Assembly (NCBI GenBank): GCA_033442325.1
Contig: JAWQFM010000029.1
Span: 455,942 to 512,553, forward strand
Length of the DNA stretch: 56,612 nucleotides
Direction of reading: 5' to 3'
Source of the DNA: Salpingoeca rosetta
Taxonomy: Eukaryota; Protista; Choanoflagellata
The notes under the pieces: generated by a model
Told to the model about the DNA's origin: nothing
The model's input: only the letters and a program-made list of their open reading frames with translations
The model's database searches: none
Position numbers and translations under genes: made by a program
Shown: piece by piece, positions 2,509-56,612 of the stretch
How the letters are laid out: every line of letters begins with the position of its first letter
Numbering within the stretch: the stretch's first letter is position 1

Positions 2509-2511
<3 letters not shown>

Positions 2512-5500
2512 GCTGACCAGCGACTGACGCACGGCGTGTCCGTGGCAGCTGTGCGGCGGTTTCTGGGTGATCTGAAGCGCGAGTTCCCCGACACGTACAC
2601 TGAGATGACCACGGAGGATGCCTGCAAGCAACTGGTTGTGCCACGCACACGCCAGGACAACTGCGCCTACGTCGAGCAGCTGCGCAAGCAGTCGCCAGAA
2701 CACGTGAACAAGGCCACCGTCTTTGTGTCACACGCATGGCGGTACAAGATCGCAGACGTGCTCAACGTCTTGCTGGAGTTTGCGCAGCAGCAAGCAAGGA
2801 AGGACGACGGCCAGCCCGTGTTCTTCTGGTTTGACCTCTTTATGAACAACCAAAACGCCAACGTCACGGCCAACCTCCCACAAGAATGGTGCGTTTTGTG
2901 TGTGTCTGTGTGTGTGTCTGTGTCTGTGTCTGTGTGGTGTCTGTGTGTGTGCGTGTGCGTGTGTGTGTGTGCATATGTGTGTGTGTGTGTAACTCTTGTG
3001 CCCTTCAACAACCACTGCCACACGCACACGTACACAGACACACGCACACTGTTCCCTCACAAGAACTGCAACCCCTTTCCCTTTCCTCCGCCTTCCTTTG
3101 CCCTCCACCCTTCCCTCTCCCCCTTCCCCCTTTCTCAACACCCAGGTGGAGCACCACATTCAAGCAGTCGATTGCCAACATTGGCCATGTGCTGCTGGTG
3201 CTCATGCCGTGGCGAGACCCTGTTCCCTTGACCCGTGCCTGGTGCCTGTGGGAGATCTTCTGTGGCATCAGCAACGAAGGCACAGAGGTCACCATCCAAC
3301 TACCCAACAGCGAAGAACAGGCGCTCGAAAACGCCATTCGCAGCAGCTACAAAGCCGTCACAGACACGCTGGTGCGCGTGCAGGCACAAAGGGCCGACGC
3401 CTTTAACCCGCACGACAAACACATGATCTTCACAGCGATCGAGTCGTGGGCGGGCGGCTTCAGCGCAGTCAACCAAGCCGTGAAGGACCAGCTGCGCGCG
3501 TGGTGCCTGCAAAAGGCCGTAGCCGCCGTCGAAGCCATGCGAGCGCGTGGCGAGGACAGCACTGACGCCTTCGCGGGGCTGTGCCTCAACGTTGGGGCGG
3601 TGCTGAGCGACTTTGGCGAGCACGACAGGGCAATCGCCTACTTTGAGACAGCCCTGCCGATTTACCTCCGCACTGAAGGGGAGAAGGGCGAGGGCGTGGC
3701 GGCGCTGTACAACAACCTCGGCCTCGCCTACGACAACAAGGGCAAGTACGACAAGGCGATTGAGTTTTATGAGAAGGCCCTCGCCATCACGGTGGAGGCC
3801 TTGGGCGAGAAGCACCCGAGCACAGCCACGTCGTACAACAACCTCGGCAACGCCTACGCCGACAAGGGCGAGTACGACAGAGCAATTGCGTACGTTGAGA
3901 AGGCCCTCGCCATCACGGTGGAGACAGTGGGGGAGAAGCACCCGAGCACAGCGAGCACGTACGGCAACCTCGGCAACGCCTACGACAGCAAGGGCGATCA
4001 CGACAAGGCCGTCCACTTCTACGAGAAGGCGCTCGCCATCAAGGTGGAGACGCTGGGCGAGAAGCACCCGAGCACGGCCGACACATACAACAATCTCGGC
4101 GGCGCCTACGACAGCAAGGGCGACTACAAGAAGGCCATCCAGTTGTACGAGAAGGCCCTCGCCATCCAGGTGGAGACGTTGGGCGAGAAGCACCCGAGCA
4201 CAGCGAGCACCTACAACAACCTCGGCAACGCCTACGCCAGCAAGGGCGAGTACGACAGAGCCGTCCAGCAGTACGAGAAGGCGCTCGCCATCTACGCGGA
4301 GGCGTTGGGTGAGAAGCATCCCAGCACAGCGAGTACATACGGCAACCTCGGCGTTGCCTACCAGAACAAGGGCCACTACGACAAGGCGATTGAGCTGTAT
4401 GAGAAGGCCCTCGCCATCAGGGTGGAAGCGTTGGGTGAGAAGCACCCGAGCACAGCCACGTCGTACGGCAACCTCGGCGTTGCCTATCAGAACAAAGGCG
4501 AGTACGACAAGGCCATTGAGTTTTACGAGAAGGACCTTGCCATCACGGTGGAGACGTTGGGCGAGAGGCACCCGAGCACGGCCGACACGTACAACAACCT
4601 CGGCGAAGCATACCGCCACAAGGGCAAGTACGACAAGGCCATTGAGTTTTATGAGCAGGGGCTCGCCATCAAGGTGGAGACGCTGGGCGAGAAACACCCG
4701 AGCACAGCACAGACGTACAACAACCTCGGTATCGCCTACGACCACAAGGGCGACTTGGACAAGGCGGTTGAGTTTTATGAGCAGGGGCTCGCCATCAAGG
4801 TGGAGACGTTGGGCGAGAAGCACCCGAGCACAGCGAGCACATACAACAACCTCGGCCTTGCCTTCAAGAACAAGGGCCACTACGACAAGGCGGTTGAGTT
4901 TTATGAGCAGGCGAGGGCGGTGTACGTGGAGGCGTTGGGCGAGAAGCACCCGTACACAGCGATGACGCTTGCGAACATTGGCCTGCTGCACGACAAGCGC
5001 GGCGAAAAGGAGCAGGCTTGCGCCTACACGCAGCAGGCGCTCGACGCTTTCACAACCACGCTTGGGCCAGACCACCCAAACACCCGCAAGGCGAAGGGTT
5101 ATCTGCTGCGCATTTGCGGCAACGACGAGCGCGATGATGGCGGTGCACGCACGGCCGCGCGGGGCGAGGACGACGACGAGCAGCAACAAGGCGGCAGTGA
5201 GCAAGTGCAAGCTGTGGCTGGCCAACAAGACGCAGCAGACGAAGATGAGCTGCAGGAGCGTTCTCCACAACAGCCTCTGGCCGGCTGGCTGCAGAAGCGA
5301 GGGCAGTGGAACATCGCCTTTCGCACTCGCTGGTGTACCCTCGGCGACGACCACCTGACGTACAGCAAGGGTCCTTCCCTTGCAGAACGTGGGCGCATCC
5401 CCCTTTCCAGCGTGCTGTCAGCTGAGCTCGCCCATGGTGGCGAGGAGTTACACGTTGCTGTTCCTGGCCGCACCTTCGTCTTCCGCCTGGACGCGCGCTC

Positions 5501-5561
5501 TGACACCTCGCTCGCTGACTGGTGCACCGCCATCAACAGCCGCATCAACGTTACCACTTGA
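2509..5561 (+). CDS. HET/TIR-like N-terminal domain + ~12 TPR (42-aa, kinesin-light-chain type) repeats + C-terminal PH domain; 2 exons (2509-2888, 3146-5561)
   Basis: The GT..AG intron 2889-3145 joins QEW/WSTTF in frame. Motifs VFVSHAW, FWFDLFMNNQ and LTRAWCLWEI are HET/TIR-like. Tandem repeats have the form YNNLGxAYxxKGxYDKAIEFYEKALAIxVETLGEKHPST. PH motifs are LAGWLQKRG..RTRWC..GRIPL..GRTFVF..DWCTAI. Confidence 0.9.
3699..4958 (+). repeat. Coding tandem array of ten 126-bp (42-aa) TPR units, with degenerate capping units on each side (~3573 and ~4959-5084)
   Basis: GGCGAGAAGCACCCGAGCACAGC...ACAACCTCGGC recurs with a 126-nt period. Confidence 0.92.
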
Positions 5562-26138: not shown

Positions 26139-29100
26139 CACGCACACACACGCACACACACGCACACACGCACACATGCACACTCGCGCGCGCACACACA
26201 CAACCCTCCCCCCCCCCCCTTTTCCCAACCTCGTAGGCGGTCGCTGATGACTGCGAGGACGACAGCAACAGCAAGCTGCCGATGCTGTTCCTGCACGCCC
26301 ACCGTGACCAGCACCTGCTTGCCTACCGCGTTGCTGCGCTGCGGGCCGCCATCACCCCGGGCATTGTCGGCACAGAGGGCGCCATGCTCTCCACGCAGGC
26401 CCTGCGCAACCGCTTCCTGGAGGTGGGCGGGTTTGACGTGATTTGCCACCTGCTCGCCCTGGCCTGGCAGCCGGCGCCGCTGTCGCCGCCGGCAGAGCAG
26501 CTGTGCACGGAGCTGTTGCTGCTCATCCTGCACACACTCGCCTGCGCGTTTGACTGCACGCTGCCCGAGCTTGAAGACCTGCTTCGGGAGAAGACGATGC
26601 TGGTGGAGGACTCGCTCGACGAGGCCGTCTTCACCAACGGGTACACGCGGTCGCCAACGGAGCGCGCGTACAACGCCGTCAAGCACTCCAACGAGCTGCA
26701 GCTGCTGGTGCAGCAGTGCGGCCAGTTTGTATCGCGCATGCACTTCTCGGCAGAGAGTGCTGGCAGCTTGGTGCCCTTGGCATACCGCACCGTTGCGCTC
26801 GTGCTGTGCGTGCGGCCGTCGCTGCTCTACTCCTTGGGCACGCCTCGCGACGTGGACAGGTTCTTCGTGCAGGGGACCCTCTATGACCCATCGCCGCTGT
26901 GCCGCCTGGCTGCCGCCCGCACCGTGTGCCAAATTGCGCAGGTGACTGTCGAGTACACGACGCTGGCTGTCCTTCGCGTGCAAACGCAGGAGATGCAGGA
27001 CGACGAAGAGGAGCAGGAGCAGGAGCAGGCCAACAAGGCAGCAGCCGACACTCCCAACCAGCAGCGTCTGCAGCAGCGGCAGCAGCAGCGGCGTCGCAAG
27101 CGCGCGTCATTGGCGCACGTGCCGACCAGCACTGTCCGGGACCACAACATCCGCCCGGACGCCGGCACGTCGCTGCTGGTCATCTTCGTGCGCATGTTCC
27201 TGGACCGCTCCCTGCCGCTGTGGAGCCCAGAGTGCGTAAAGTTGCCAAAGCCGCCGCAGCGCGTGTTCTTCCTGGACCAGGTGTTTGATGTGCTGGCGTT
27301 TCTGCTCAACACGCTGGCGAGCGTGGACAGCATGCTCACGCTGCAGGACAAGGAGGTGCTCGCCTCCATGCCGGACGCCCCCGCGCTGACTACAATGGAG
27401 ATGGCGTTGTTTAGGAAGGTGGCGCTGGCACACTACGAAACTGAGATGCATCGCCCGTCACGCCGCGTCTCGCAGCGGTCGTCCTCATCGTCGTCGCTGT
27501 CGTCGTCATCTTCTTCGTCTTCGCCTTGCTCGCCAGAGAAGCACGACGCTGGCATGGCAAACAACACCAACACTGACAACACTGGCAACGATAGCGGTGG
27601 TGATGGTGACGGAAGGAACAACCCGTTCAGTGACGATGACACTGCCGAGGCGGCGAAGCAAGCACACCTGCTGGACGCCATGTCCACGGCTGTGCGTCAG
27701 GGGAGTGCAACGCTGAACCCCAATCCAAACACGAGCGATGGCACGCATGCCGCTGGCGGGACAAGTTCCACTGAACACGAGGAGGGTGACAACGGTGACG
27801 TGGACAGGGCAGGGGATACCGCAGCACGCCAGTTTGCCGAGGAGAAGCGGGCAAGCGTGTACTCGTGGCAGCAGCAGCAGGAAGAGGCGGCTGAGGAGGA
27901 CTTGAAGCGCAGCATGCGACACCGCCGCCGCCGCCATCGTCGTCGTCAGCAACGTCGTCGTGACAAGGGGGAGGCCGCGTGCACCATGATGAGCACCACC
28001 TCGACAGGGCGGCCGTCCCGCCACAGTGGTGGTCGTAGGCCACGGCGTCTCCGCCTCGCGTCGCACCGGTACTCGCACGCGGGTTTGTATGAGGAGAATG
28101 CAGCGAGCCAGCACGAGCAGCGCGCCATTCACGGCCACCTGAAGGTGATGCACGAGCTGATGGCATTTAGAAACGTGGATCTGCTGTCCTTCCTGCGCCC
28201 ACAGCAACAGCAGCAGCAGCAGCAGCTGAATGGGCAAGACCAGTACGTGCACCAGGACGATGACGATGCCTTTGCACCCCATCCACAAGAACTGCAGCAG
28301 TCACTGCAGCAGAAGGGAGAGAAGGAAGGCGTTCTGCCTGGCACATCGTCCACCGCTTCCAGTGCAGCCACGCCTGCAGGAAGGAGCAGCAGCAGCGGCG
28401 GCGATGCCGCTGTGTCGCGCGTTGCATCTGAGGAGGCGGTTGCTGGCGCCATCAACACGTTTGGGCACGGCCTCTCCCGCCAGGGATCTGCCGCGAGCGA
28501 CGGCGCTCTGCCATCGTCCGCACACACACCCAAGGCCAACGGCACAGCTCACATGGCAGCAGCACCGACACCAGCAGCGCGCGGCGCCGGCAGTGCACAA
28601 CAGCACAAGACAGCGCTCCTGTCACCGAGCACAGCTGCAGCAGCGACAGTAGGAGGCGCCGGAAGCAACGACAGCAGTAGCTGTGCTGGTGCAAGCGGTG
28701 CGAGCCAGGTGGCCCGCATGCACCTGGAGAGCATCAACACGGGCTCTTTCCTCGTCATTCTGCTTGAATTCTACCTGTTCCCTGCCGCGGTTGCGCAGGC
28801 CATGGCGGAGGTGACGGGCAGCAGCGAAGCGCTGCAGCAGCCGCTGTGCCAGCTTGACTTCACCCGCAACCTGTGCGCCTCGTTTGTGACGCGCCTGTGC
28901 TCGCGCAGTGGCGCGTGTCAGGAGGTGGTGGTGGAGTGGCTGGACCGCTTTGTGCTCTCTGGCGTGAAGATTGGCGCGACGGAGTGGAAGGTGGAGCCGA
29001 ACATTGAGCCGCGCACGTGCGGTGTTGGCCTGGCAAACGCATCGGCCACGTGCTACATGAACAGCACCTTCCAGTCGCTGTTCATGCAGCCGATTGTGCG

Positions 29101-32100
29101 GGAGTTTGTGCTGAGCATCGACGACGCGCTGGAAACCAAATACCGCCAGGAGCGCCTGAAGGAGGCCATGGAGGAATACACGCAGGAATTGAAGAAGAAG
29201 AAGCAGCAGCAGGAACAGCAGCAGCATGAGACGGTCAGCGGTGATGCGGGCGCACAGCAAGAGCAGCAGCAGCAGCAGCAGCAGCTTCCAGGCACGCGGG
29301 CAGCCGCACTCCTCTCTGACACGACGGCAACAGCGACTGCAGCAGACACAGTTGTGGCAGCAACAACGACACCCGCACCAGAATCTGGCAACCATGGCGA
29401 GAAACGCCAGGAAGAAAAGGATGCGGGAGACAAAGTGGAAGAAGAGGACGGGGCACCCAAGCCCCCAACCCTGGACACGGTTGGGCACAGCTTCTTCCAC
29501 GAGTTTCAGCGCATCTTTGCGCACTTGGCAGGCTCGCAGGAGCGCTCCTACCGGCCCGAGTCGTTCTGGAACACGTTTCTGTTCTACGGCGAGCCCGTGA
29601 ACCCGCGCGAACAGATGGACGTGGCGGAGTTTATTCAGAACTTTGCCGACCAGGTTGACTCGCACCTGCGCGCACACGACCTCCCGCCCATCTTCGAGTG
29701 GACAATTGGGGGCGTGTTCAGCGACCAGAAGCGCGTGAAGGAGTGTGGGTGCATGTACGTGCGCGAGCAGCCGTTTGTGCTGCTGCCGGTCGCTGTGAAG
29801 AACAACGTGACGCTTGAGGAGGCGCTTGCAGAGACGATTCGTGGCGAGACGATTGAGGACTACAGGTGCGAGCGCTGTGACATCCGCGGGACCGCCATCA
29901 AGCGCATGTGCGTGCAGCAGCTGCCGCGCACGCTGATTGTGCACCTGAAGCGGTTTGACTTTGACTGGTCTGCGCAGGAGACGGTCAAGTTCAACGACAA
30001 GTTTGTCTTCCCAGACGAGCTTGACTTGTACCCGTACACGACGGGCGGTGTTGCGGCGCGCGATGCGCAGGAGCAAGCGATGGCCAAGCAGCAGGAACGG
30101 GAGGAGCGGCGGCGACAGCGGCGCGCTGAACGCCGGCAGGCACGCAGGGAGGAGAAGCGAAGACAGAGGGAGGAGAGGGAGAGGCTGCGCAAGAACAAGG
30201 CAGCAGAGGAAAAGAAGGCAGCGGAGGACAAGGTGGAAGAGATGCAGGACGCAAGGAACCAGGTCAAGGCGGATGGACAAGAGGGTGCGGACACGCAACA
30301 AAACGTGGAGGATGGTGCGCATGAGAACAATGGTGCGACTGCTGTGAATGCTGGCGATGAACAACACAACCAGCAACAGCAGCAGCAGCAGCAGCAGCAG
30401 TCTGCGAGTGACGCTGCCATGCGCGAAGACACCAGTGCCTCTGCCACCGAGATGGAGGATGATGACGATGACGATGACGATGATGATGATGTGTCGGACA
30501 GTGAAACTGATGGTGATGGTTCATCCTCGCGTGCCTCTGCCGCGTCCAGCGCGCCACTGGCGTCACCGCCCCTCTCCTCATCCTCTCCCTCATCGTCGTC
30601 GGCCTCGTCACCGCACAGCGGCAACTGTTTGTATGAGTTGCACGGCGTTGTTGTGCACATGGGCAATGCGCGTGCCGGCCACTACTACGCGTACGCGCGT
30701 GTGCGCGAGACGGTGGACACGCTGGAGCAGGGCACCGCTGGCAAGTGGATCAAGTTCAACGACAGCGCCGTGTCGTATGTGGAAGTGACGCCCGAGCTGA
30801 AGGAGGACCAGTTCTTTGGCGGCGACGACTTTGTGGTGACGGCGTACGGGCATTCGCAGAAGAACTACAGCGCCTACCTGCTCATTTATGAGCGAAAGGA
30901 CGTGCTGGCACAGCTGACGGAGGAGGAGTCTGTGCTGCTGCTGGTGCAGAAGGCGCTCAGGGAGACACGCCGCAAACGGCAGCAGGAGAAACGGCAGCAG
31001 CAGCAGCAGCAGCAACCAGACTCGCAGGAGCGGCAGCAGGAAGCCGACGATGGTGGTGGTGATGGTGTTGATGGTGGCATGGCTGTCTCGCCCGAGTGCG
31101 GGGATGAATCCGTGTCGTCGTCGATGCGAACGACACCAACGACAACGACAGCAGCGACTGGTGCCACCATGGACACAACGAGCACCACCTCTGTCGCCAC
31201 CACCGCCATCACAGCAACAGCGACAACCACGAATGACACACGTGGCAGCGGTGCTGATGGCGGTGATGAGGAGGATGCGAGGTTGGCGCGGATGGAGCGG
31301 CAATTGCGCTCGCTGATCAAGCAGCGGCACTTCAGCGAGGAAGTGTGCGAATCGCGGGACATTGTGTCCCAGCTGCGCGCAGACAACCTCAAGTTCAACT
31401 TCCAGCGTGCGGCCTTCTCAAAGGAGCTGTTCTCGCTAGTGCGCAGCCTGGTGGATGCTGGTGGCAGCGTTGACAGCAGTGGCACGAGCGCACGCACGCT
31501 GCGGCTGGTGCTGCACTTCTTCTTCGACATCTATCTGCACCTGCACGCGTCGACGCGCAAGATTGAGGCCAACCTGACGCACTCGCTGACGTTCCTAATG
31601 CGGGTGCGGCCGGAGGTGCAGGACATGGTGCTGGCGTATCTGGTTGAGCGCGAAGACATCCTGCCCATGTTTGTGATTGGCTGCGAGGAGCAGGAGGTGC
31701 GCGAGCTCGTGTTTGATGTCGTGCGTGCGGCGCTTGGCAGCAACACGGCGCCGCCGTCGTCGTCGTCATCATCGACGTCGATCACACCGTCGCCAGCGCA
31801 GGCGTTCCAGCGGCTGCCGCACCTGTCGTCGTTCCTGCTGCAGCTGACCTCGCTCGTCCGCGACAAGGCCGTGCACTTCCCCAGCAACATGTCCCCGGTC
31901 CTGTCGCTGCTCGCCGACTTTGTGGACGTGAGCCCCGCGCACGTTGCCCTGTGCGCGTCTGTGCAGCTGGATGTCGCGCTGGTGCACACGCTGTGGGCGA
32001 CGGCGGGCGCGACGAGCAGCAGTGGCGGTGCAGACCGCAAGCTGACGGTGACACAGCGCATGGACCTTCTTCGCGCCTACGACATCCTCACCGCCGTCTT

Positions 32101-33261
32101 CTTGAAGTCCGACCTCTCCTCTTACGCAACATTGCCGGCCGGCGTGTCCTTCAAGCCAGGTTGGGGAGGGGTGTGTGTGGGTGTGGGTGTGTGTGCGTGT
32201 GCGTGGGTGGGTGTGCGTGTGCGTGTGCGTGTGCGTGTGTGTGGGTGTGTGGGTGTGTGGGTGTGTGGGTGTGACAAAGGGTGGAGGGAGGGGGATTCAA
32301 GATGAGGTGCACCTTGGGTGCGGATGCTTCATGTTGTCATACCCTCTTGCTCGCTGGGATTGTTGCAACTTTCAATAGCCTCTGTTCTTACTCTCTTACA
32401 TCAACGTCATCACATGTGTGTGTGTGTGTGCAGAGTTCAACATTGTGAATGCGCCGCCGCTTCGCCTCTCTCGTCCGCTCTTTGACGTCACCATTGCGTC
32501 AGACTTTCTCTTTGCGGACATCATTACCATGGAGACAAGTGCGTGCCGCTGTTACATGTTTCTGTCTGTGTGTTGTGTGTGTGTAGTGTGTGTGTGTGTG
32601 TGTAGTGTTGTGTTGTGTTGTGTTGTGTTTGTACGTCTGTATCTGTATTGTGTGTGTGTGTGTGTGTTGTGTTGTGTCTGTACTTCTGTATCTGTATGCC
32701 CATTGCTGTTGCCATACCACATCTCACTCACTGCTGTGTTCAAACACGTTGTGTTGTGTTTGCATTCAGTCCAACAAGACCACCTGTCAAGAGTGCTTGT
32801 CCACGCCTGTCGCCGTAACGCATGTAAGTCTTGCCATGTGCCTGCCTTTGTGTGCGTGTGGGGTTGTGTATGTGCTGCGCGGGCGGCTCGGGTCATCGTG
32901 CTCCCCTGCACACTGCTCTCACGTGCATGACGTCAACCCCATCTTCAACAAACAACAACAACAACAACACGTACAGTGCTGTCGACGCGTGTGATTACGC
33001 GGCTGCATGAGGCAATCATCTCGTGCAGTCTCGACGGGCGCCGCTACTGTTCCCTCCTTGCAGACGTCCTCTCCATCCGTGACGAAGTCTCCCTCCACCG
33101 CGCACGTAAGGCGCTGTTCTTGCTTTTGCCCTTGTGCTCTCGTTCTTGTTCTTTTTTTTTTTCTTGTTATTCTTATTCCTGTGCTTGCCATCAACACTTT
33201 TGCATGTCACTTGCGCTTTGGTCCAAACAGCAGCTGACCTCAAACACACACATCACCACAT

Positions 33262-46593: not shown

Positions 46594-47462
46594 CTAAGCA
46601 AGATGGTGGTCTTTGAGTTCTCCGAACGATGGTCGCTCACGAGGGCTCTGCGCCATACACTTGAACGTCAGTGACTGGAACCACTCGGGGATGGCTATTG
46701 GAAAGTGGGTGCGAGAGAGTGAGTGAGTGAGATTATATGAATGATTGTGATTGTGTGTATGTGTGTGTGAGTGAGGAGAGAAGGACACGCAAGTAAACAA
46801 TCAAAGCACACACACACACACACACACACACATCACACACGGTTCGCAGCTCACCATCTTCTTCGCGATCATCAAATCGCAACCGCTTCCCATCCTCCAA
46901 AAGATTGCTGATGGTGGCGAGGATCGGCCCACGATACCCGCCCCCCTTCTCCTGCTCAATGAGGTCTGGCACACGCTGTGTCGCCACCTCCCACATGAGC
47001 ACGCCAAAGCTGAAGATGTCGGCTTCAAAGCTGTACTTGTCACCCGTCAATGCCTCTGGTGCCATGTACAGCGGCGTCCCCACACCAGCCGTTAGCGTCA
47101 TGCTCGTCATTGTCTGCAGTCCAGCCTGCTGGCTGTATTGGGGATCATCAACATCATGGGTGGATGACAGGCGGGTATGGCTGCTGCCGTGGGCTCTGCC
47201 ACCTCCACCACGTGTAAAGCACTGGCGAATGGACCCGAAATCCGTAATCTTGGCGCGAAGCGACGATGACACCAGCACGTTTCCGCTCTTCAGGTCTCTG
47301 TTTGGGTGGTGTTGGTGTAGTTGGGGATGAGGGTAGGATGGTGCGGTGAGCAGTGAATAAGAAGCACGTACCTGCACACAAGCACCCACACACACACACT
47401 CACGCGCACTTGCACACACACACTCACACGCACTTGCACACACACACACACAAGCACAGTCA

Positions 47463-47514
<52 letters not shown>

Positions 47515-50500
47515 CACCGGTGCATCTGGTCCAGACTGTGGATAAAAGCCATGCCACTCGCAACATCACGCAGCAAGCGCAGCTTCAAGTCCCACACACT
47601 GTTCACATCATCGCTAACACCACCACTGCTGCTTTCCTCGATCTTCTTATTCCTCACCTCCATCAACACCCCCTCCATATCTTTCCCCAGCAGGTCCTTG
47701 AGGGACCCCATCGTCACAAATTCCAGCACCAGGAACGGGCTGCCATTGGGATCGGTGCCCGCCCCAAAGAACCGCACCACGTGTGGATGCCGTGTACGCT
47801 GCAAGAACTCAACCTCCTTCTCAAACTCAAGCACCGTGCTCTCGTCAAACGCCATGACGGCTTGTTGCAGCACTTTGACTGCCACCATCACTGTGTCCCA
47901 CTCTGCCTTGAACACCACGCCAAACGCACCCGCAGCCACACGCTTAATCATCCTCAGCTCATCGTACTCAATCTCCCACGCCTTCTTTAGCGCCATTACT
48001 TCTTCATCCATCTCCACCAACAGCTGCTCCTGCAGGCCGATGCGTTTCGTCATGCCACGGTAGCGGCGTGACAACCACGCCACAAACAGGCCAAAGAACA
48101 GGCCGCCAATGACCGAGCCAGCAGCAATGCCGGCAATATCTGGGGTGTCCACCACACACCGCCCACCTGACGCCAGCTTGAAACCACGAGCGCATGTGCA
48201 GTGGAAGGAGAACACAACCTGGGGCGCGATCAGGTTTGAGCTGCCCAGCGGGCGCACGTCCATGTTTGACAGCTGAAGCGCACATTCAATGGGCGCATCA
48301 GTCAGCTGAAGGATGGGAGGAATGGGGCGGTTTGAAATGGCAGTGGTGTCAGCAGTCACGAAGGCGTCATCCGACAAGACAATTGTTCTGGCAGTGATGC
48401 GATTGACCTCTGCCAGGTGGCTCAGCCACGCGTTCCCCGCAAAGTCCAGCACGTCTGCTCGCTCGAGGCAGTTGCGTAGCGTTGCAGCTGCCTGGCGCAC
48501 TTCAATGGCCCCGACCAAGTTGCGGGCGAAGAGAATGCGTGTGCCCCATCGCGTGCACAGCGCCCCCGATGGTGGGACGTTGGTGTTGCTGATGTCAAGG
48601 ATGTCGATTGGTGGCGCGTTAATGGACGTGAGTTGGGTGCACCCGGAGACGTTCAACTCACGCAGTGGATTGTGGACGGTGATGGATCGCAGGTGCTTGT
48701 TGTCGCTTAGGAGCAGTGAGCCGAATGTCTTGTCAGGACATACTTGGATGGCTCTGTAGTCCGTGTTGGCGATACGAAGCTCACGCACGTCAGTTGCGAG
48801 CAGTTTACACAATGCGCTCATCGGCACCGTGTTGCTGCTGGCGCCTGGCCAGCCCAGGTGAAGCGTGTCGAGACTCAACGGTGGAAGGTCGTCAATTGAT
48901 GGAACCACGGCGCTGATGTCCACATTCTCCAAACTGAGCGTTGATAGGCGTGAGATGCTGGTGATGTTGGTGATGTCTGACACCACTGCTCTGGATTCTG
49001 CTTGCCGGGAAGCGTCAAGTTCAAGGACGTTGAGATTGGCCAGACGAAGGAGTGGCGCCAGGTCTATGTGTTCGATTACGTGGTCTTGCAGACGGAGGGT
49101 GCGCAGAGCAGGTGTGAGGGCTGCATCTGGCAGCTCCCGCAAGGGGTTGTGGCTCAGGTCGAGTCGGCGAAGGCGATGGAATGTTCTGGGGAGGTGCAGT
49201 TGAGTCAAGTCGTTGCCGTCAAGGTTCAGGAAGCTCAGGAAAGCCGGCCGTGATGCTTGTAGGACGTTATCGATCGAGCGAAGGCGATTGTTGGCAAAGG
49301 ACACTTGCAACAGTGCCAAGTTTCGTGTAAAGAGGGTGCGTGGAAGGGAGATGATTTTGGTGTCAGTGCAGGAGAACTGGGTGAGACGTCGGTTGAACCG
49401 AAGGAGGTCCGCAGGCAAGGCTGTCAGGTCATTGGCCCCGATGTTCAGCTGCCTCAGTGCTGACAGGCCTTTGAACACGCCTGGAGACAGTGACGTCAAC
49501 GCATTGTCAAAGATCTGGAGATGCTGCAAGGATGAGAGACTGGCAAAAATGTTCTCGGGGAGGGACGTGATGAAGTTGTTTGCCAGTCCAAGCACCGTGA
49601 GACGGGTGGTGTTTCGAAACAGCGTTGGTGGCAAGCTGGTGAGGAGCATGCTCTCGAGGGTGAGGTGATCCAGCCTGCTCAGTGAAATGAAGGTGTCCGC
49701 ATCAAGCTTTGCGATTGGGTTCTGGTGCATCTCCAAGCGCGTCAGGTTGGCGAGTGGATGGAACAGGCCAGAAGGAATGGCGCTGATGTCGTTTGAGAAC
49801 AGGATCAGCCACTGCAACTGGGCAAGGTTATCGAGTCCTCCTGGCTCAAGCTCAGAAACGAGGTTGTGACTTAAGCCCAGTTGTTGCAGCATGGTCATCC
49901 CATTGAAATTGTCCTTGGCAATGCGACGAATACGGTTTTGGCGCAAGTTTAGCACTCTCAGCGAAGTCAAGCCTGAAAGATCCGGGATGGTCGCCAGCGA
50001 GCAGCCGGTGACGTGAAATTGCGAAACACCACGTGCGTTTTGGAAGCCGCTTGTGTCCACCTCGCGCAGCAGCGCGCTGTTGCGTATCCAGATGGTGTTG
50101 ATGCCGGTCATTGGGTTGAGCACGCTCAATCGAAACGTGGCAAACTGTACGCCATCCAAGAGGACCTTGTTGCTGTCCGCGGTCCAATTGCCACGGTTGA
50201 ACATCCATTGCAAAGTCGCTTCGGCAAGGTGCCCGTTCACATTCAACTGGATCACGGAGCCCGAAATAGCTTGTAGCCCGCTTGCATCAGTGCCGTCATC
50301 CACATGATCGTCGACACTCAAGGTGATGGTAAGCTGTCCGTTGGTGGCTGCACCAGGACATGTTCCGTTGACCACACTTGTCAGCGTGCACTGTCCAGCC
50401 TGCACAACTGGAGCAGACACCTTCCGCCGCACGCGCCTGTGGTGCTGCCGTGCGTGTTGCAAGGAGGGTTGCGTGGCCGTTGCGTGTGTGGAAGACGACA

Positions 50501-51386
50501 GCGAGGATGGAGTGGGCGGTGCGTTGGAACGGTGCGTTACATGCTCGTGAGTTAGGTCGTGAGTTGTGTCGTGAGCGCGCTCCTTGTCCTTCCTGTCGTG
50601 ATCATCGTCCTCACACCCAAACGCAGTCATCATGCGATGAATCGGTGACAGGTCCAAAAATGGGAAGGGCAACGCGCCTGGCTCCTCGTGTGCCGTTTCA
50701 TTTTGAGGTGTTCCCGTATTGCTACGGCCTACATTGTGTATGCGCTTGAAGAGCGGCGAGTCCTTGCCATGAGCCTTCAGTACGTTCAGCACCCGCGCCA
50801 TGCTGTCTAGTGTCCCGTGCACATCCGAACACAGCTACAGAGGGGGTTTGGGTGCACGTGACAAGAGGCAAGAAACGATGGGTGCGTGCGTGCATGTTGG
50901 TGAGAAGGGACGGCAACACAGCACAGTATGTATATTTGTATGTGTACGTATACTCGAGCTGGAGGAAACCCAAACAAAGCAGTCACCCAACACAACACAA
51001 CAAGAACAACAAGAACAACAAGAACAACAAGAACAACAAGAACAGCAAGAACAGCAAGAACAGCAAGAACAGCAAGAACAGCAAGAACAACAAGAACAGC
51101 AAGAACAACAAGAACAACAAGAACAACAAGAACAGAGGGCACCAAGGGCAAGAACGAGAGTACCCGCACTTCTCAGCTTCTCATAACACATGCAGGCCAG
51201 CACGCGGGCACTCGAGCACGCTGAAACGGGCAGTGGCAGACGTACCTGATAGTCTTGTGATGTCAGCGGTGGCACAGGACTTGTCGCTGCTGCTGGTTTC
51301 ATGCTGTGCACGGTCATTGTCATGGCAGCCATCATCACCACGACCCTCACCACCACCAGTAACTTCACCACGGCTGCCACAGCCAT
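46594..51386 (-). CDS. Leucine-rich-repeat receptor kinase (signal peptide, pro-region, LRRs, EGF-like Cys motif, TM helix, TKL-type kinase); exons ~51386-51246, 50834-47519, ~47298-46845, ~46690-46594
   Basis: Hydrophobic N-terminus MAVAAVVKLLVVVRVVV; many LxxLxLxxN repeats; CTCARGFKLASGGRC; TM IAGIAAGSVIGGLFFGLFVAWL. Kinase motifs are AGAFGVV, VAVK, HRDLKSGN, DFG, GTPLYMAPE, DIFSFGVLMWE and RPSF. Confidence 0.93.
51001..51134. repeat. 9-bp intronic minisatellite (CAAGAACAA/CAAGAACAG)n
   Basis: It lies in intron 1 of the LRR kinase. The same unit (GTTCTTGTT on the sense strand) occurs at ~39385-39455. Confidence 0.9.
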
Positions 51387-54317: not shown

Positions 54318-55108
54318 CACAGCATCGCCAGGGCGAGGAGAGCAGCGTGGATGAAGTGGTGGAGCCAAATTGCCACTGTGGCGAGACGACCCATCTCGTC
54401 TTTGTTGTCCACGGAATCGGTGCGTGTGAATGTGAATCCTGTGTGTTGTACGCGCGTGTTGGAGTTGTTTTGCAGGCGTGTGTGCCGTCTTGTCTTGTGT
54501 GGCAGTCCTTGTGTCGTGTTCAACTGCATGCATTCGGTGTTACAACTCCTCCTTGAACGTCTTGCGCTAACCCAACAACACATGCCACTTGACACACTCC
54601 ACACACCTCACATCCCACGCAACAAACCTGTGACCTTGGTGTACATACATGCACGTGTGCAGGCCAGAATTTTGACGAGAGCATTGAAAAGCACGCGCTG
54701 TCCTTTGATCGGCAGATGCGAAAGATTGCGCGCAAGGGCGTCTTTGGGCGCTCTTACAGGTCCGGGGTGGTTGGTGGTGATAATGGTTGTTGTTGTTGTT
54801 TTTGTTGGTGGTGGCAGTTATGGTTGTTGGTGGTAGTTGGTGGTGGTTGTTGGTTGTGGTTGCTGTTGGTGGTGGTGGTGAGGGTGGTTGTTGGTGACAC
54901 GTCGTGGGTGCACACCCTCACGCGTTTCCCGCTACTGGCTCTTACCTCCTCCGCAGGATTGGGGCCAAACGCGTACAGTTTATTCCGATTCAATGGCGAA
55001 ATACGCTCGCCCTCAACACGGACACCATCCGCGCCATCACGCCCGAGGTGAGCAATTATTTGTGTGCGTGCGTGTGCGTGTGTGTGTGTGCGTGTGTGTG
55101 TGTGTGCG

Positions 55109-55163
<55 letters not shown>

Positions 55164-56612
55164 NNNNNNNNNNNNNNNNNNNNNNNNNNNNNNNNNNNNN
55201 NNNNNNNNNNNNNNNNNNNNNNNNNNNNNNNNNNNNNNNNNNNNNNNNNNNNNNNNNNNNNNNNNNNNNNNNNNNNNNNNNNNNNNNNNNNNNNNNNNNN
55301 NNNNNNNNNNNNNNNNNNNNNNNNNNNNNNNNNNNNNNNNNNNNNNNNNNNNNNNNNNNNNNNNNNNNNNNNNNNNNNNNNNNNNNNNNNNNNNNNNNNN
55401 NNNNNNNNNNNNNNNNNNNNNNNNNNNNNNNNNNNNNNNNNNNNNNNNNNNNNNNNNNNNNNNNNNNNNNNNNNNNNNNNNNNNNNNNNNNNNNNNNNNN
55501 NNNNNNNNNNNNNNNNNNNNNNNNNNNNNNNNNNNNNNNNNNNNNNNNNNNNNNNNNNNNNNNNNNNNNNNNNNNNNNNNNNNNNNNNNNNNNNNNNNNN
55601 NNNNNNNNNNNNNNNNNNNNNNNNNNNNNNNNNNNNNNNNNNNNNNNNNNNNNNNNNNNNNNNNNNNNNNNNNNNNNNNNNNNNNNNNNNNNNNNNNNNN
55701 NNNNNNNNNNNNNNNNNNNNNNNNNNNNNNNNNNNNNNNNNNNNNNNNNNNNNNNNNNNNNNNNNNNNNNNNNNNNNNNNNNNNNNNNNNNNNNNNNNNN
55801 NNNNNNNNNNNNNNNNNNNNNNNNNNNNNNNNNNNNNNNNNNNNGAAAAAAAAAACAAAAATACTTTTAGTCAGGATACTGAGGTCGCAGGCCGTCGACT
55901 AGTGACAAATACTCAATACGAAGAGATTTTGTCTCAGTATTAGTGACGAACAATTCCTCACTTCTGCACACCGCATAACACATATTATATTTGGTTGTGC
56001 ATTCGCCTCGCACGTGTGTCCCTGGAGTGGCACGCTTTTGTAACTCGCCCCCTCCCTCTACCCGCTCCAATTTTTTACGTCCCTCTGTCTCTCCCTTGCC
56101 TCATACCAGGCGTTCTTGAAGTTGCGGTTTTCGGTGTCGAATCTGTTCCTGCTCGGCTCTCCCGTCGCCATCTTCCTCGCTATGCGCGGGGCACAGGCTG
56201 CAGGCAACACGTGCGTTGCGCTGATGGTTGAATGCGGTCGAACGTGACCCCCGGGATTGCGTGTGTGCGCGTGTGCGCACGCGTGTGTATGTTGCGTGTA
56301 CGTGTACGTGCGCGTATGTATGTTGCGTTCGCGCGTGCGTGCGTGTGTATGTTGCGTGTACGTGTACGTGCACGTGAGACGTTTCCCACCCCATTACTGG
56401 TATTCCCTTCTCATTTTCTTTCCACGTATCCGCACACCCTTCCGCACCCTCACACGCCCCGCGCCTCCATGCCTGTCTCCATAGGCTGCATGGGGCAGAC
56501 GTGGTCCTCCCTGCGCACGTGCGCGTGTTCAACATCTACAACAGCATGGATCCTCTTGCCGGCACGCATCGAACCCCTGCTGGAAACAGACGTCAAGCCA
56601 GGTCTGTGTGTG
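51880..56612 (+). CDS. DDHD-family intracellular phospholipase A1 (PA-PLA1/DDHD1-2/SEC23IP-like); partial, interrupted by a gap and running off the window
   Basis: MAARWFF..DSQALEKAW; GGAYRVDV; LWKG..VFRATWF; THLVFVVHGIG; RVQFIPIQWR; NLFLLGSPVAIFLAMRG; VFNIYNSMDPLA..RIEPLL. The catalytic GxSxG motif probably lies in the gap. Confidence 0.88.
55164..55844. other. Assembly gap
   Basis: Run of N following a (TG)n tract. Confidence 1.

What the first reader, a model, noticed from the sequence alone, without database searches (positions are those of the whole stretch)
2509..5561. Candidate NTPase-less immune receptor: TIR/HET-like effector fused directly to a TPR sensor and a PH domain
Seen: the N-terminal ~200 aa carry VFVSHAW, FWFDLF..NQ and TRAWCLWEI, followed by the TPR array and a PH domain. 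No P-loop (NACHT/NB-ARC) motif is visible. Known: fungal HET domains are TIR-related cell-death effectors, and the WCxxE glutamate is the catalytic residue of TIR NADases. Fungal and bacterial NLR-like proteins use TPR arrays as sensors. Inference: this is a ligand-gated NAD+-cleaving or signalling defence protein in a unicellular holozoan, with the PH domain recruiting it to membranes such as phagosomes.
Basis: partly seen in the sequence, partly recalled or inferred. Interest (0 to 1): 0.8.

Follow-up and report, generated by a model that had tools for sequence, protein, structure and literature searches.

The report
Unannotated TIR-like domain fused to TPRs
This choanoflagellate gene joins a divergent TIR-type (NAD-cleaving immune enzyme type) domain, with its catalytic glutamate intact, directly to a TPR repeat array and a PH membrane-binding domain. 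It belongs to a very large protist gene family that domain databases do not yet recognise, but its function has not been tested.

Summary
In Salpingoeca rosetta, window 2509-5561 (+) is a two-exon gene of 931 aa (intron 2889-3145). It has the three quoted motifs, 12 kinesin-light-chain-type TPR units, a C-terminal PH domain and no P-loop.

The N-terminal 262 aa match no Pfam model, neither TIR nor HET. Several independent lines still point to a TIR fold:
- Pfam TIR_2 hits 22 of 136 homologues below threshold.
- The only PDB sequence hit is the bacterial TIR PdTIR.
- Profile-profile alignment puts W159 and E163 on the TIR WxxxE catalytic motif.

W77, R157, C160 and E163 are invariant in 136 diverse homologues. 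The family has 11,807 cluster representatives, at least 40 S. rosetta paralogues (18 with PH), mostly TPR partners and no NACHT or NB-ARC. The RAWCLWE motif scan found no prokaryotic relative.

So "TIR-like, NTPase-less, TPR-fused" is supported. Pfam HET membership is not. NADase activity, an immune role and phagosome targeting remain inference. I rate it a new variant of a known kind. The TPR array was noted before on the same DNA (s1-436205).

The parts
2509..2888 (+). Exon 1 (aa 1-126 plus two bases of codon 127)
   Evidence: ORF from ATG 2509 with donor GTGCGT at 2889. Identical to the N-terminus of annotated P0001.
2889..3145 (+). Intron, 257 nt, GT...AG, with a (GT)n run after the donor and a CA-rich run before the acceptor
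   Evidence: Sequence. Splicing restores the frame. No RNA reads fall in bins 2917-3120, but the tool skipped repeats there.
3146..5561 (+). Exon 2 (aa 127-931 plus the stop codon)
   Evidence: Residues 128-438 are identical to P0001.
2509..3551 (+). N-terminal conserved domain, aa 1-262 (intron excluded). It has no Pfam model. The TIR-like core is aa 67-250 (nt 2707-3515), flanked by an N-terminal helical lead and a C-terminal helical extension.
   Evidence: Alignments A1 and A2. AF2 pLDDT 88.9, pTM 0.88. Fold matches span model residues 67-256.
2719..2739 (+). VFVSHAW, the betaA strand motif (aa 71-77)
   Evidence: Strand E71-74 in the model. Aligns with FISHAW of PdTIR 3h16 and of bacterial TIR_2 domains.
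2824..2853 (+). FWFDLFMNNQ, betaB and the start of the BB-loop region (aa 106-115)
   Evidence: Strand E105-107. W107, D109 and Q115 are at least 90% conserved. Aligns with VWYD of TIR_2.
3231..3257 (+). TRAWCLWEI, start of helix alphaC with the WxxxE motif (aa 156-164). The candidate catalytic Glu E163 is at 3252-3254 and the invariant Cys C160 at 3243-3245.
   Evidence: Helix 158-169 follows strand 141-145. R157, C160 and E163 are invariant in A2. W159 and E163 align with W and E of the TIR WxxxE motif.
3573..5117 (+). TPR array: one degenerate unit plus eleven 42-aa kinesin-light-chain-type units (aa ~270-784)
   Evidence: TPR_12, TPR_10 and TPR_NPHP3 hits. Units lie at exact 42-aa spacing. 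Hypervariable positions are 1, 2, 20, 33, 36 and 40.
5118..5270 (+). Acidic, Gln-rich low-complexity linker (aa 785-835)
   Evidence: Read from the translation. No Pfam hit covers these residues in the C-terminal scan.
5271..5558 (+). PH domain (aa 836-931) with a basic beta1-beta2 stretch, KRGQWNIAFRTR
   Evidence: PF00169 E=1.8e-8. The same domain occurs in 18 of 38 S. rosetta paralogues.

Best explanation
The gene encodes one member of a large, eukaryote-wide family that Pfam does not annotate. In this family a divergent TIR-superfamily domain is fused, with no intervening NTPase, to a kinesin-light-chain-type TPR array. In about half of the S. rosetta paralogues, including this one, a C-terminal PH domain follows.

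Shown here:
- the gene model;
- the TIR-type fold;
- invariant W77, R157, C160 and E163, with W159-x3-E163 aligned to the TIR WxxxE catalytic motif;
- no P-loop;
- paralogue expansion;
- a conserved TPR scaffold with a few hypervariable positions.

Inferred mechanism: the TPR array binds a ligand or partner, or drives self-association. This clusters the TIR-like domains so that a composite active site forms around E163, as in known TIR enzymes. The domain then cleaves NAD+ or a related nucleotide, either depleting it or producing a signal. This would serve a conflict, cell-death or self/non-self pathway. The basic PH loop would place the protein on phosphoinositide membranes. My rough confidence by step is about 0.85 for TIR-fold homology, 0.45 for Glu-dependent nucleotide or NAD+ chemistry, and 0.35-0.4 for a defence or recognition role.
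For: Gene model.
Sequence: Pfam TIR_2 is hit below threshold by 22 of 136 homologues, against 5 for the next family. PADLOC PDC-S66, a PdTIR-type TIR model, is hit by 10 of 136. The only PDB chain at E<=10 is PdTIR 3h16. hhalign against Pfam-verified bacterial TIR_2 domains gives probability 93%, P=3e-7. Against 93 TIRs without SHAW it gives P=1.2e-4 in the same register, W159 on W and E163 on E.
Conservation.
Architecture: 147 of 187 relatives carry TPR, there is no NACHT or NB-ARC, and PH occurs in 19. There are at least 40 S. rosetta paralogues.
Hypervariable TPR positions. This parallels fungal NLR TPRs (PMC4986451).
Literature: the TIR catalytic Glu and the neighbouring Cys are functionally important (PMC9153377). 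Many eukaryotic TIRs with this Glu, including one from S. rosetta, make cADPR (bioRxiv 10.64898/2026.04.20.719644).
Confidence: 0.5

Rival explanations
1. It is a non-enzymatic scaffold or adaptor. The TIR-like domain only mediates homotypic assembly, as in MyD88 or MAL. The KLC-type TPR array binds cargo or cytoskeletal partners, and the PH domain anchors the complex to membranes, giving a trafficking or signalling adaptor family.
Against: E163, C160, R157 and W159 are kept in about 98% of 285 domain instances spanning choanoflagellates, chytrids, oomycetes, haptophytes and green algae. That pattern is typical of a catalytic centre rather than an interface. The 2026 survey reports that most animal TLR and interleukin-receptor (scaffolding) TIRs lack the catalytic site.
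Confidence: 0.22
2. It is an enzyme of the same fold but with different chemistry. It could be a nucleoside or nucleotide N-glycosidase or transferase (NDT or MilB-like), or a 2',3'-cNMP synthetase acting on nucleic acids, rather than an NADase.
Against: All sequence-level signals point to TIR_2 or PdTIR models and none to NDT families.
Confidence: 0.13
3. The TIR resemblance is only a generic three-layer alpha/beta arrangement, and the domain does something unrelated.
Confidence: 0.1

Closest known systems
Bacterial TIR_2 (PF13676) domains of the PdTIR / AbTir / ThsB type
   Same: Same strand and helix order from betaA to alphaC. Shared FISHA(W/S) betaA motif, a W-x-D betaB, and WxxxE in alphaC aligned with W159 and E163. 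These give the best recurrent Pfam and PADLOC signal.
   Different: No member reaches the TIR_2 gathering score. The domain is about 250 aa, with a conserved 60-aa N-terminal lead, a longer betaC-alphaC loop (PWxDPxPLTR) and a helical C-terminal extension. A scan of 185,579 bacterial and archaeal species genomes for the P-x-[TK]-R-x-W-C-x-x-E motif found no relative.
Plant TIR domains of TNL receptors (RPP1, RUN1, SNC1, RPS4)
   Different: Plant TNLs and TNPs place an NB-ARC NTPase between the TIR and the repeats. Here the TPRs follow directly and there is no P-loop. Sequence identity is only 9-16%.
Fungal HET domain (PF06985)
   Same: From memory, HET has a three-block pattern (hydrophobic-S-x-x-W; W-x-D-x-x-x-x-N-Q; R-x-W-x-x-x-E) and an N-terminal position ahead of TPR or WD repeats. 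HET is a published remote TIR relative whose best HHpred hit was also PdTIR. HET-like sequences were reported in choanoflagellates, haptophytes, stramenopiles and green algae, the same taxa as here (PMC4986451).
   Different: The Pfam HET model hits none of the 9 domains tested at E<=10, is absent from the 25 families shown for the 136 domains at E<=1, and is absent from the precomputed Pfam lists of all relatives. Fungal HET NLRs carry a NACHT or NB-ARC.
Eukaryotic TPR-TIR proteins in the 2026 TIR survey (e.g. S. rosetta F2TVE2 and F2TXA0)
   Same: Same organism, with TIR and TPR in one chain and no other domain listed in those rows (supplement of 10.64898/2026.04.20.719644).
   Different: Those have a canonical, database-detectable TIR at the C-terminus after the TPRs. 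This family has a divergent TIR-like domain at the N-terminus before the TPRs, and does not appear in the stored part of that table.

Membership tests
TIR superfamily (fold level) | Flavodoxin-like three-layer alpha/beta fold with strand-helix order betaA-alphaA-betaB-alphaB-betaC-alphaC-betaD-alphaD-(betaE)-alphaE | tested here: met
TIR superfamily (catalytic type) | Conserved glutamate in alphaC, within the WxxxE motif of bacterial and plant TIR NADases | tested here: met
   W159-C-L-W-E163 lies at the start of helix 158-169. It is invariant in 136 homologues and aligns with W/E of Pfam-verified TIR_2 domains. The side-chain orientation could not be checked.
Pfam TIR / TIR_2 (PF01582 / PF13676) | Score above the curated gathering threshold | tested here: not met
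   P0001:1-262 has no hit at E<=10. 22 of 136 homologues hit TIR_2 only below threshold, with a best E of 0.0026.
TIR NADases | Glu-dependent NAD+ cleavage or cADPR-isomer production after oligomerisation | not testable with these tools
   This needs biochemistry. See the next steps.
HET domain (PF06985) | Match to the Pfam HET model | tested here: not met
   No HET hit for 9 domains at E<=10. HET is not among the 25 families shown for 136 domains at E<=1 and is not in any precomputed Pfam list. No profile-profile test against HET was possible because no HET sequences were obtainable here.
NLR / STAND receptors | Central P-loop NTPase (NACHT or NB-ARC) between the effector and the repeats | tested here: not met
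   No Walker A in the 931 aa. No NACHT, NB-ARC or AAA among the 25 families shown (of 30 hit) across the 140 non-TIR, non-TPR segments of 187 relatives.
Kinesin-light-chain-type TPR (TPR_12 / TPR_10) | Tandem 42-aa TPR units matching PF13424 / PF13374 | tested here: met
   TPR_12 E=6.6e-182 and TPR_10 E=2.4e-147. Eleven units lie at exact 42-aa spacing.
PH domain (PF00169) | Score above the gathering threshold | tested here: met
   35.3 bits against a cut-off of 25.1, E=1.8e-8. Lipid binding was not tested.

The most novel reading that the evidence does not exclude
The family is a previously unrecognised, eukaryote-wide class of NTPase-less TIR/HET-type receptors. Diversifying KLC-type TPR arrays would directly gate a Glu-dependent NAD+ or nucleotide-cleaving domain. 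[quoted passage not shown] It would also be a sequence bridge between bacterial TIRs, fungal HET and plant TIRs.
Probability: 0.3. Interest if true: 0.8.

Novelty: new variant of a known kind. Interest (0 to 1): 0.6.

Why it matters
TIR enzymes are a shared immune currency of bacteria, plants and animals, and surveys of eukaryotic TIRs start from Pfam or InterPro annotations and Foldseek searches. This family has 11,807 clusters at 50% identity, at least 40 copies in S. rosetta alone, and an invariant WxxxE glutamate. Pfam and the source annotations do not flag it, and it is not seen in the stored part of a 2026 TIR survey table. If it is active, it would add a large branch to the TIR/HET superfamily in protists and in animals' sister group. 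It would show that repeat arrays can be coupled to TIR effectors without a STAND NTPase. It would also offer a tractable model, since S. rosetta is genetically manipulable, for the still unknown biochemistry of HET-like domains.

Tried and rejected
- Pfam on the split halves and on the whole N-domain gave nothing.
- PDB sequence search with profile A1 gave only noise: ResE and ATP synthase delta.
- ESM Atlas searches by features returned only unnamed clusters with no TIR, HET or other Pfam name.
- tblastn of a family member against plasmids gave only a chance VCBS hit.
- The search for bacterial or archaeal relatives through the RAWCLWE motif found 9 pattern matches, none confirmed.
- A word-based search with profile A2 at E<=0.1 returned only strong family members (E<=1e-25) and no bridging HET- or TIR-annotated proteins.
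- The hhalign result against motif-selected TIRs is inflated by that selection. The trimmed control fell to P=0.024, so I added a less biased TIR set.
- RNA read laying did not give a countable splice joint. Depth was 0-15, the tool skipped the repeat-rich intron, and several read groups carry fixed differences or leave the window at 5545, so they come from paralogues.
- No second copy of the domain lies in the window.
- I could not obtain model coordinates for a residue-level superposition, nor HET sequences for a profile-profile test.

Full report
**Observation.** The window comes from Salpingoeca rosetta, according to the names its sources give the matching proteins. An ATG at 2509 opens a 380-nt exon. 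A GTGCGT donor at 2889 and a CAG acceptor ending at 3145 remove a 257-nt intron rich in (GT)n and CA repeats. Exon 2 then runs to the TGA at 5559-5561, giving a 931-aa protein. The junction (...NLPQEW|WSTTFKQ...) is the one used in the annotated protein P0001, and it lies in a stretch conserved across distant homologues (W127 and W128 in at least 90% of sequences). All three quoted motifs are present: VFVSHAW at aa 71-77, FWFDLFMNNQ at aa 106-115 and TRAWCLWEI at aa 156-164. Pfam finds 12 stretches of kinesin-light-chain-type TPR (TPR_12 E=6.6e-182) and a C-terminal PH domain (E=1.8e-8, above threshold). Eleven TPR units lie at exact 42-aa spacing, and there is no Walker A motif.

**Family to which the N-terminal domain belongs.** Residues 1-262 match no Pfam model, neither TIR nor HET, even at E<=10. 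They do define a very large family. A word-based search found 38 S. rosetta paralogues of 553-1121 aa, plus relatives at 28-42% identity. An exhaustive profile search of 1.84 billion cluster representatives found 11,807 proteins at E<=1e-3 and 2,784 at E<=1e-30. Named members come from chytrid fungi (Phlyctochytrium, Chytriomyces, Rhizoclosmatium) and the oomycete Aphanomyces. The taxon labels of matching ESM Atlas clusters are oomycetes, haptophytes and green algae.

In an alignment of 136 diverse domains, W77, R157, C160 and E163 are invariant. F72, S74, H75, A76, W107, D109, Q115, P148, W149, P152, W159, D217, I221 and N236 are at least 90% conserved. Over 296 domain instances, E163 is Glu in 278 of 283 non-gap cases. 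A motif scan of one genome for each of 185,579 bacterial and archaeal species found no relative.

**Fold.** AlphaFold2 run on alignment A1 gave a confident model (mean pLDDT 88.9, pTM 0.88). It has an alternating strand-helix core: strands 71-74, 105-107, 141-145 and 174-178, with helix 158-169 carrying WCLWE. An N-terminal helical lead and a long C-terminal helical extension flank the core.
- Foldseek against the PDB gave no hit at E<=1e-3. Its top 12 were all plant TIR domains (RPP1, RPPT, SNC1, RUN1), with E from 6e-3 and probability up to 0.96.

**Sequence-level tests.**
- Scanning the 136 domains one by one against Pfam at E<=1 gave TIR_2 in 22 members (best E 0.0026). The next family was hit by 5, and HET was not among those listed.
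- The same scan against PADLOC gave PDC-S66 in 10 members. I showed that PDC-S66 is a PdTIR-type TIR model (15 of 15 bacterial TIRs hit it, down to 2.8e-74).
- A profile search of all PDB sequences gave a single hit at E<=10: the Paracoccus TIR protein 3h16 (E=0.25). FISHAW...WFD of the family aligns there with FISHAW...WYD.
- For a profile-profile test I fetched bacterial loci encoding FISHAWED and confirmed them as TIR_2 (E 1e-17 to 1e-27). hhalign gave probability 93% and P=3e-7 over 78-80 columns from betaA to alphaC, with R157/K, W159/W, E163/E and I164/L aligned.
- Because I had selected those TIRs by the betaA motif, I trimmed that motif from both sides. The score fell to P=0.024, in the same register, against a best of P=0.06 among 20 column shuffles.
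- A less biased set of 93 Pfam-annotated TIRs lacking SHAW, gathered by homology, still gave P=1.2e-4, probability 55%, in the same register.

Taken together, I put the probability that this is a true, divergent TIR-superfamily domain with the catalytic-type Glu in the canonical place at about 0.85.

**HET.** From memory, HET has an S-x-x-W block, W-x-D-x-x-x-x-N-Q and R-x-W-x-x-x-E. Dyrka et al. 2014 reported that HET is remotely related to TIR, with PdTIR as the best HHpred hit. They also reported HET-like sequences in choanoflagellates (including an S. rosetta protein), haptophytes, stramenopiles and green algae (PMC4986451). However, the Pfam HET model does not match this family, and I could not obtain HET sequences for a profile-profile test. 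I therefore do not file the domain as HET. It may lie between HET and TIR_2.

**Architecture and family behaviour.** Of the 187 proteins examined, 147 carry KLC-type TPR units. The remaining non-TIR, non-TPR segments contain more TPRs, PH (19 segments) and rare C1, cNMP-binding, EF-hand and RanBP zinc-finger domains. There is no NACHT, NB-ARC or AAA. Aphanomyces versions carry ankyrin repeats. Atlas relatives carry DUF285, methyltransferase or HNOB domains. Some proteins hold two or three copies of the domain. Thus "NTPase-less" holds for the relatives examined.

In S. rosetta, 18 of 38 paralogues end in the PH domain, usually with a very basic beta1-beta2 stretch (WLRKRGRRRAAFR; here WLQKRGQWNIAFRTR). 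From general knowledge, that stretch fits the K-Xn-(K/R)-X-R phosphoinositide-binding signature, but lipid binding is untested.

Across 176 TPR units of the S. rosetta paralogues the scaffold is nearly fixed. Positions 1, 2, 20, 33, 36 and 40 exceed 3 bits of entropy. Units within this gene are 70% identical on average in protein and 77% in DNA. This agrees with an earlier first-stage note on the same stretch (s1-436205). It also parallels the internally conserved, hypervariable KLC-type TPRs of fungal NLRs (PMC4986451). It suggests a recognition surface but does not prove one.

**Expression.** Three 2026 stranded RNA-seq runs place reads only in the orientation expected for a + strand RNA, at low depth (0-15). 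The 18 reads covering 2562 at the 5' end show no difference from the window there, and 19 reads of that run extend past the ends of the stretch. No reads fall in the intron bins, but the tool skipped repeats there and no splice joint reached the reporting threshold. Several read groups carry fixed differences (2841, 3278, 5505) or leave the window after 5545 with a sequence that is absent from it. These reads belong to close paralogues. Transcription of this exact copy is therefore plausible but not cleanly shown.

The annotated 721-aa 'variant' omits exactly five TPR units (aa 439-648). Its boundaries lie on the repeat lattice with no GT..AG. I take it to be an alignment or annotation artefact, or repeat slippage.

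**Mechanism.** The best-supported reading is an effector-sensor fusion. A TIR-type domain has its catalytic constellation (W159, C160, E163, plus R157) under strong purifying selection. It is attached directly to a diversifying TPR array and, in this copy, to a membrane-targeting PH domain. By analogy with known TIR enzymes, activity would require clustering. Here the TPR array, rather than a STAND NTPase, would supply ligand- or partner-dependent assembly. The literature supports the general plausibility. The catalytic Glu and the adjacent Cys matter in plant TIRs (PMC9153377). A 2026 preprint found Glu-dependent cADPR production by many eukaryotic TIRs, including a canonical S. rosetta TIR, and lists S. 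rosetta TPR-then-TIR proteins with no other domain listed in those rows. Everything beyond fold, motif and architecture remains inference.

The rivals are:
- a non-catalytic assembly adaptor;
- the same fold with other nucleotide chemistry (NDT or MilB-like, or 2',3'-cNMP synthetase);
- a coincidental generic alpha/beta fold.

**Novelty.** TIR domains, HET-TIR kinship, TIR plus TPR fusions and HET-like sequences in choanoflagellates are all published. What appears new is this specific family. It is very large, eukaryote-wide, unrecognised by Pfam and by the annotations its sources give, and apparently absent from the stored part of a 2026 TIR survey table. The TIR-like domain is N-terminal and joined straight to the TPRs. 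I rate it a new variant of a known kind, with interest 0.6.

**Surroundings.** The other large ORFs of the window with a Pfam match encode a USP-type deubiquitinase (26282-32305, +) and an LRR plus tyrosine-kinase protein (47460-50822, -). There is no second copy of the domain. An assembly gap lies at about 55.1-55.9 kb.

Noticed in passing
window 2889-3145: The intron starts with an imperfect (GT)n run (about 2893-2990) and carries a CA-rich run (about 3020-3050) before the acceptor.
   Followed up: partly
window 4080-4709: The annotated 721-aa 'variant' (P0001) omits exactly five 42-aa TPR units. The boundaries are repeat-lattice identical and lack GT..AG, so this is probably an annotation artefact or repeat slippage rather than an intron.
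   Followed up: partly
window 5496-5545: 33 RNA reads from three runs carry 5505 A>G and then diverge after 5545 into GAGTGAGGGCGCGAGG..., which is not in the window. They are transcripts of a near-identical paralogue with a different C-terminal end.
   Followed up: partly
window 26282-32305 (+): A 2007-aa ORF with a USP-type ubiquitin carboxyl-terminal hydrolase domain (UCH, E=6.7e-41).
   Followed up: no
window 47460-50822 (-): A 1120-aa ORF with LRR_8 repeats followed by a tyrosine/serine-threonine kinase domain, i.e. an LRR receptor-kinase-like gene.
   Followed up: no
window about 55100-55900: GC content drops to 0.000 at 55300-55599 and stays low on either side. I take this to be a run of N, i.e. 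an assembly gap; the bases were not read.
   Followed up: no
P0052, P0107 (three copies); P0053-P0062 and others (two copies): Some metagenomic and chytrid relatives carry two or three tandem copies of the TIR-like domain in one protein.
   Followed up: no
L001-L089 (bacterial loci): The FISHAWED pattern retrieved 89 bacterial stretches. Nearly all encode PdTIR-like TIR_2 proteins, some with two adjacent copies (L072). PADLOC model PDC-S66 is this TIR type.
   Followed up: partly
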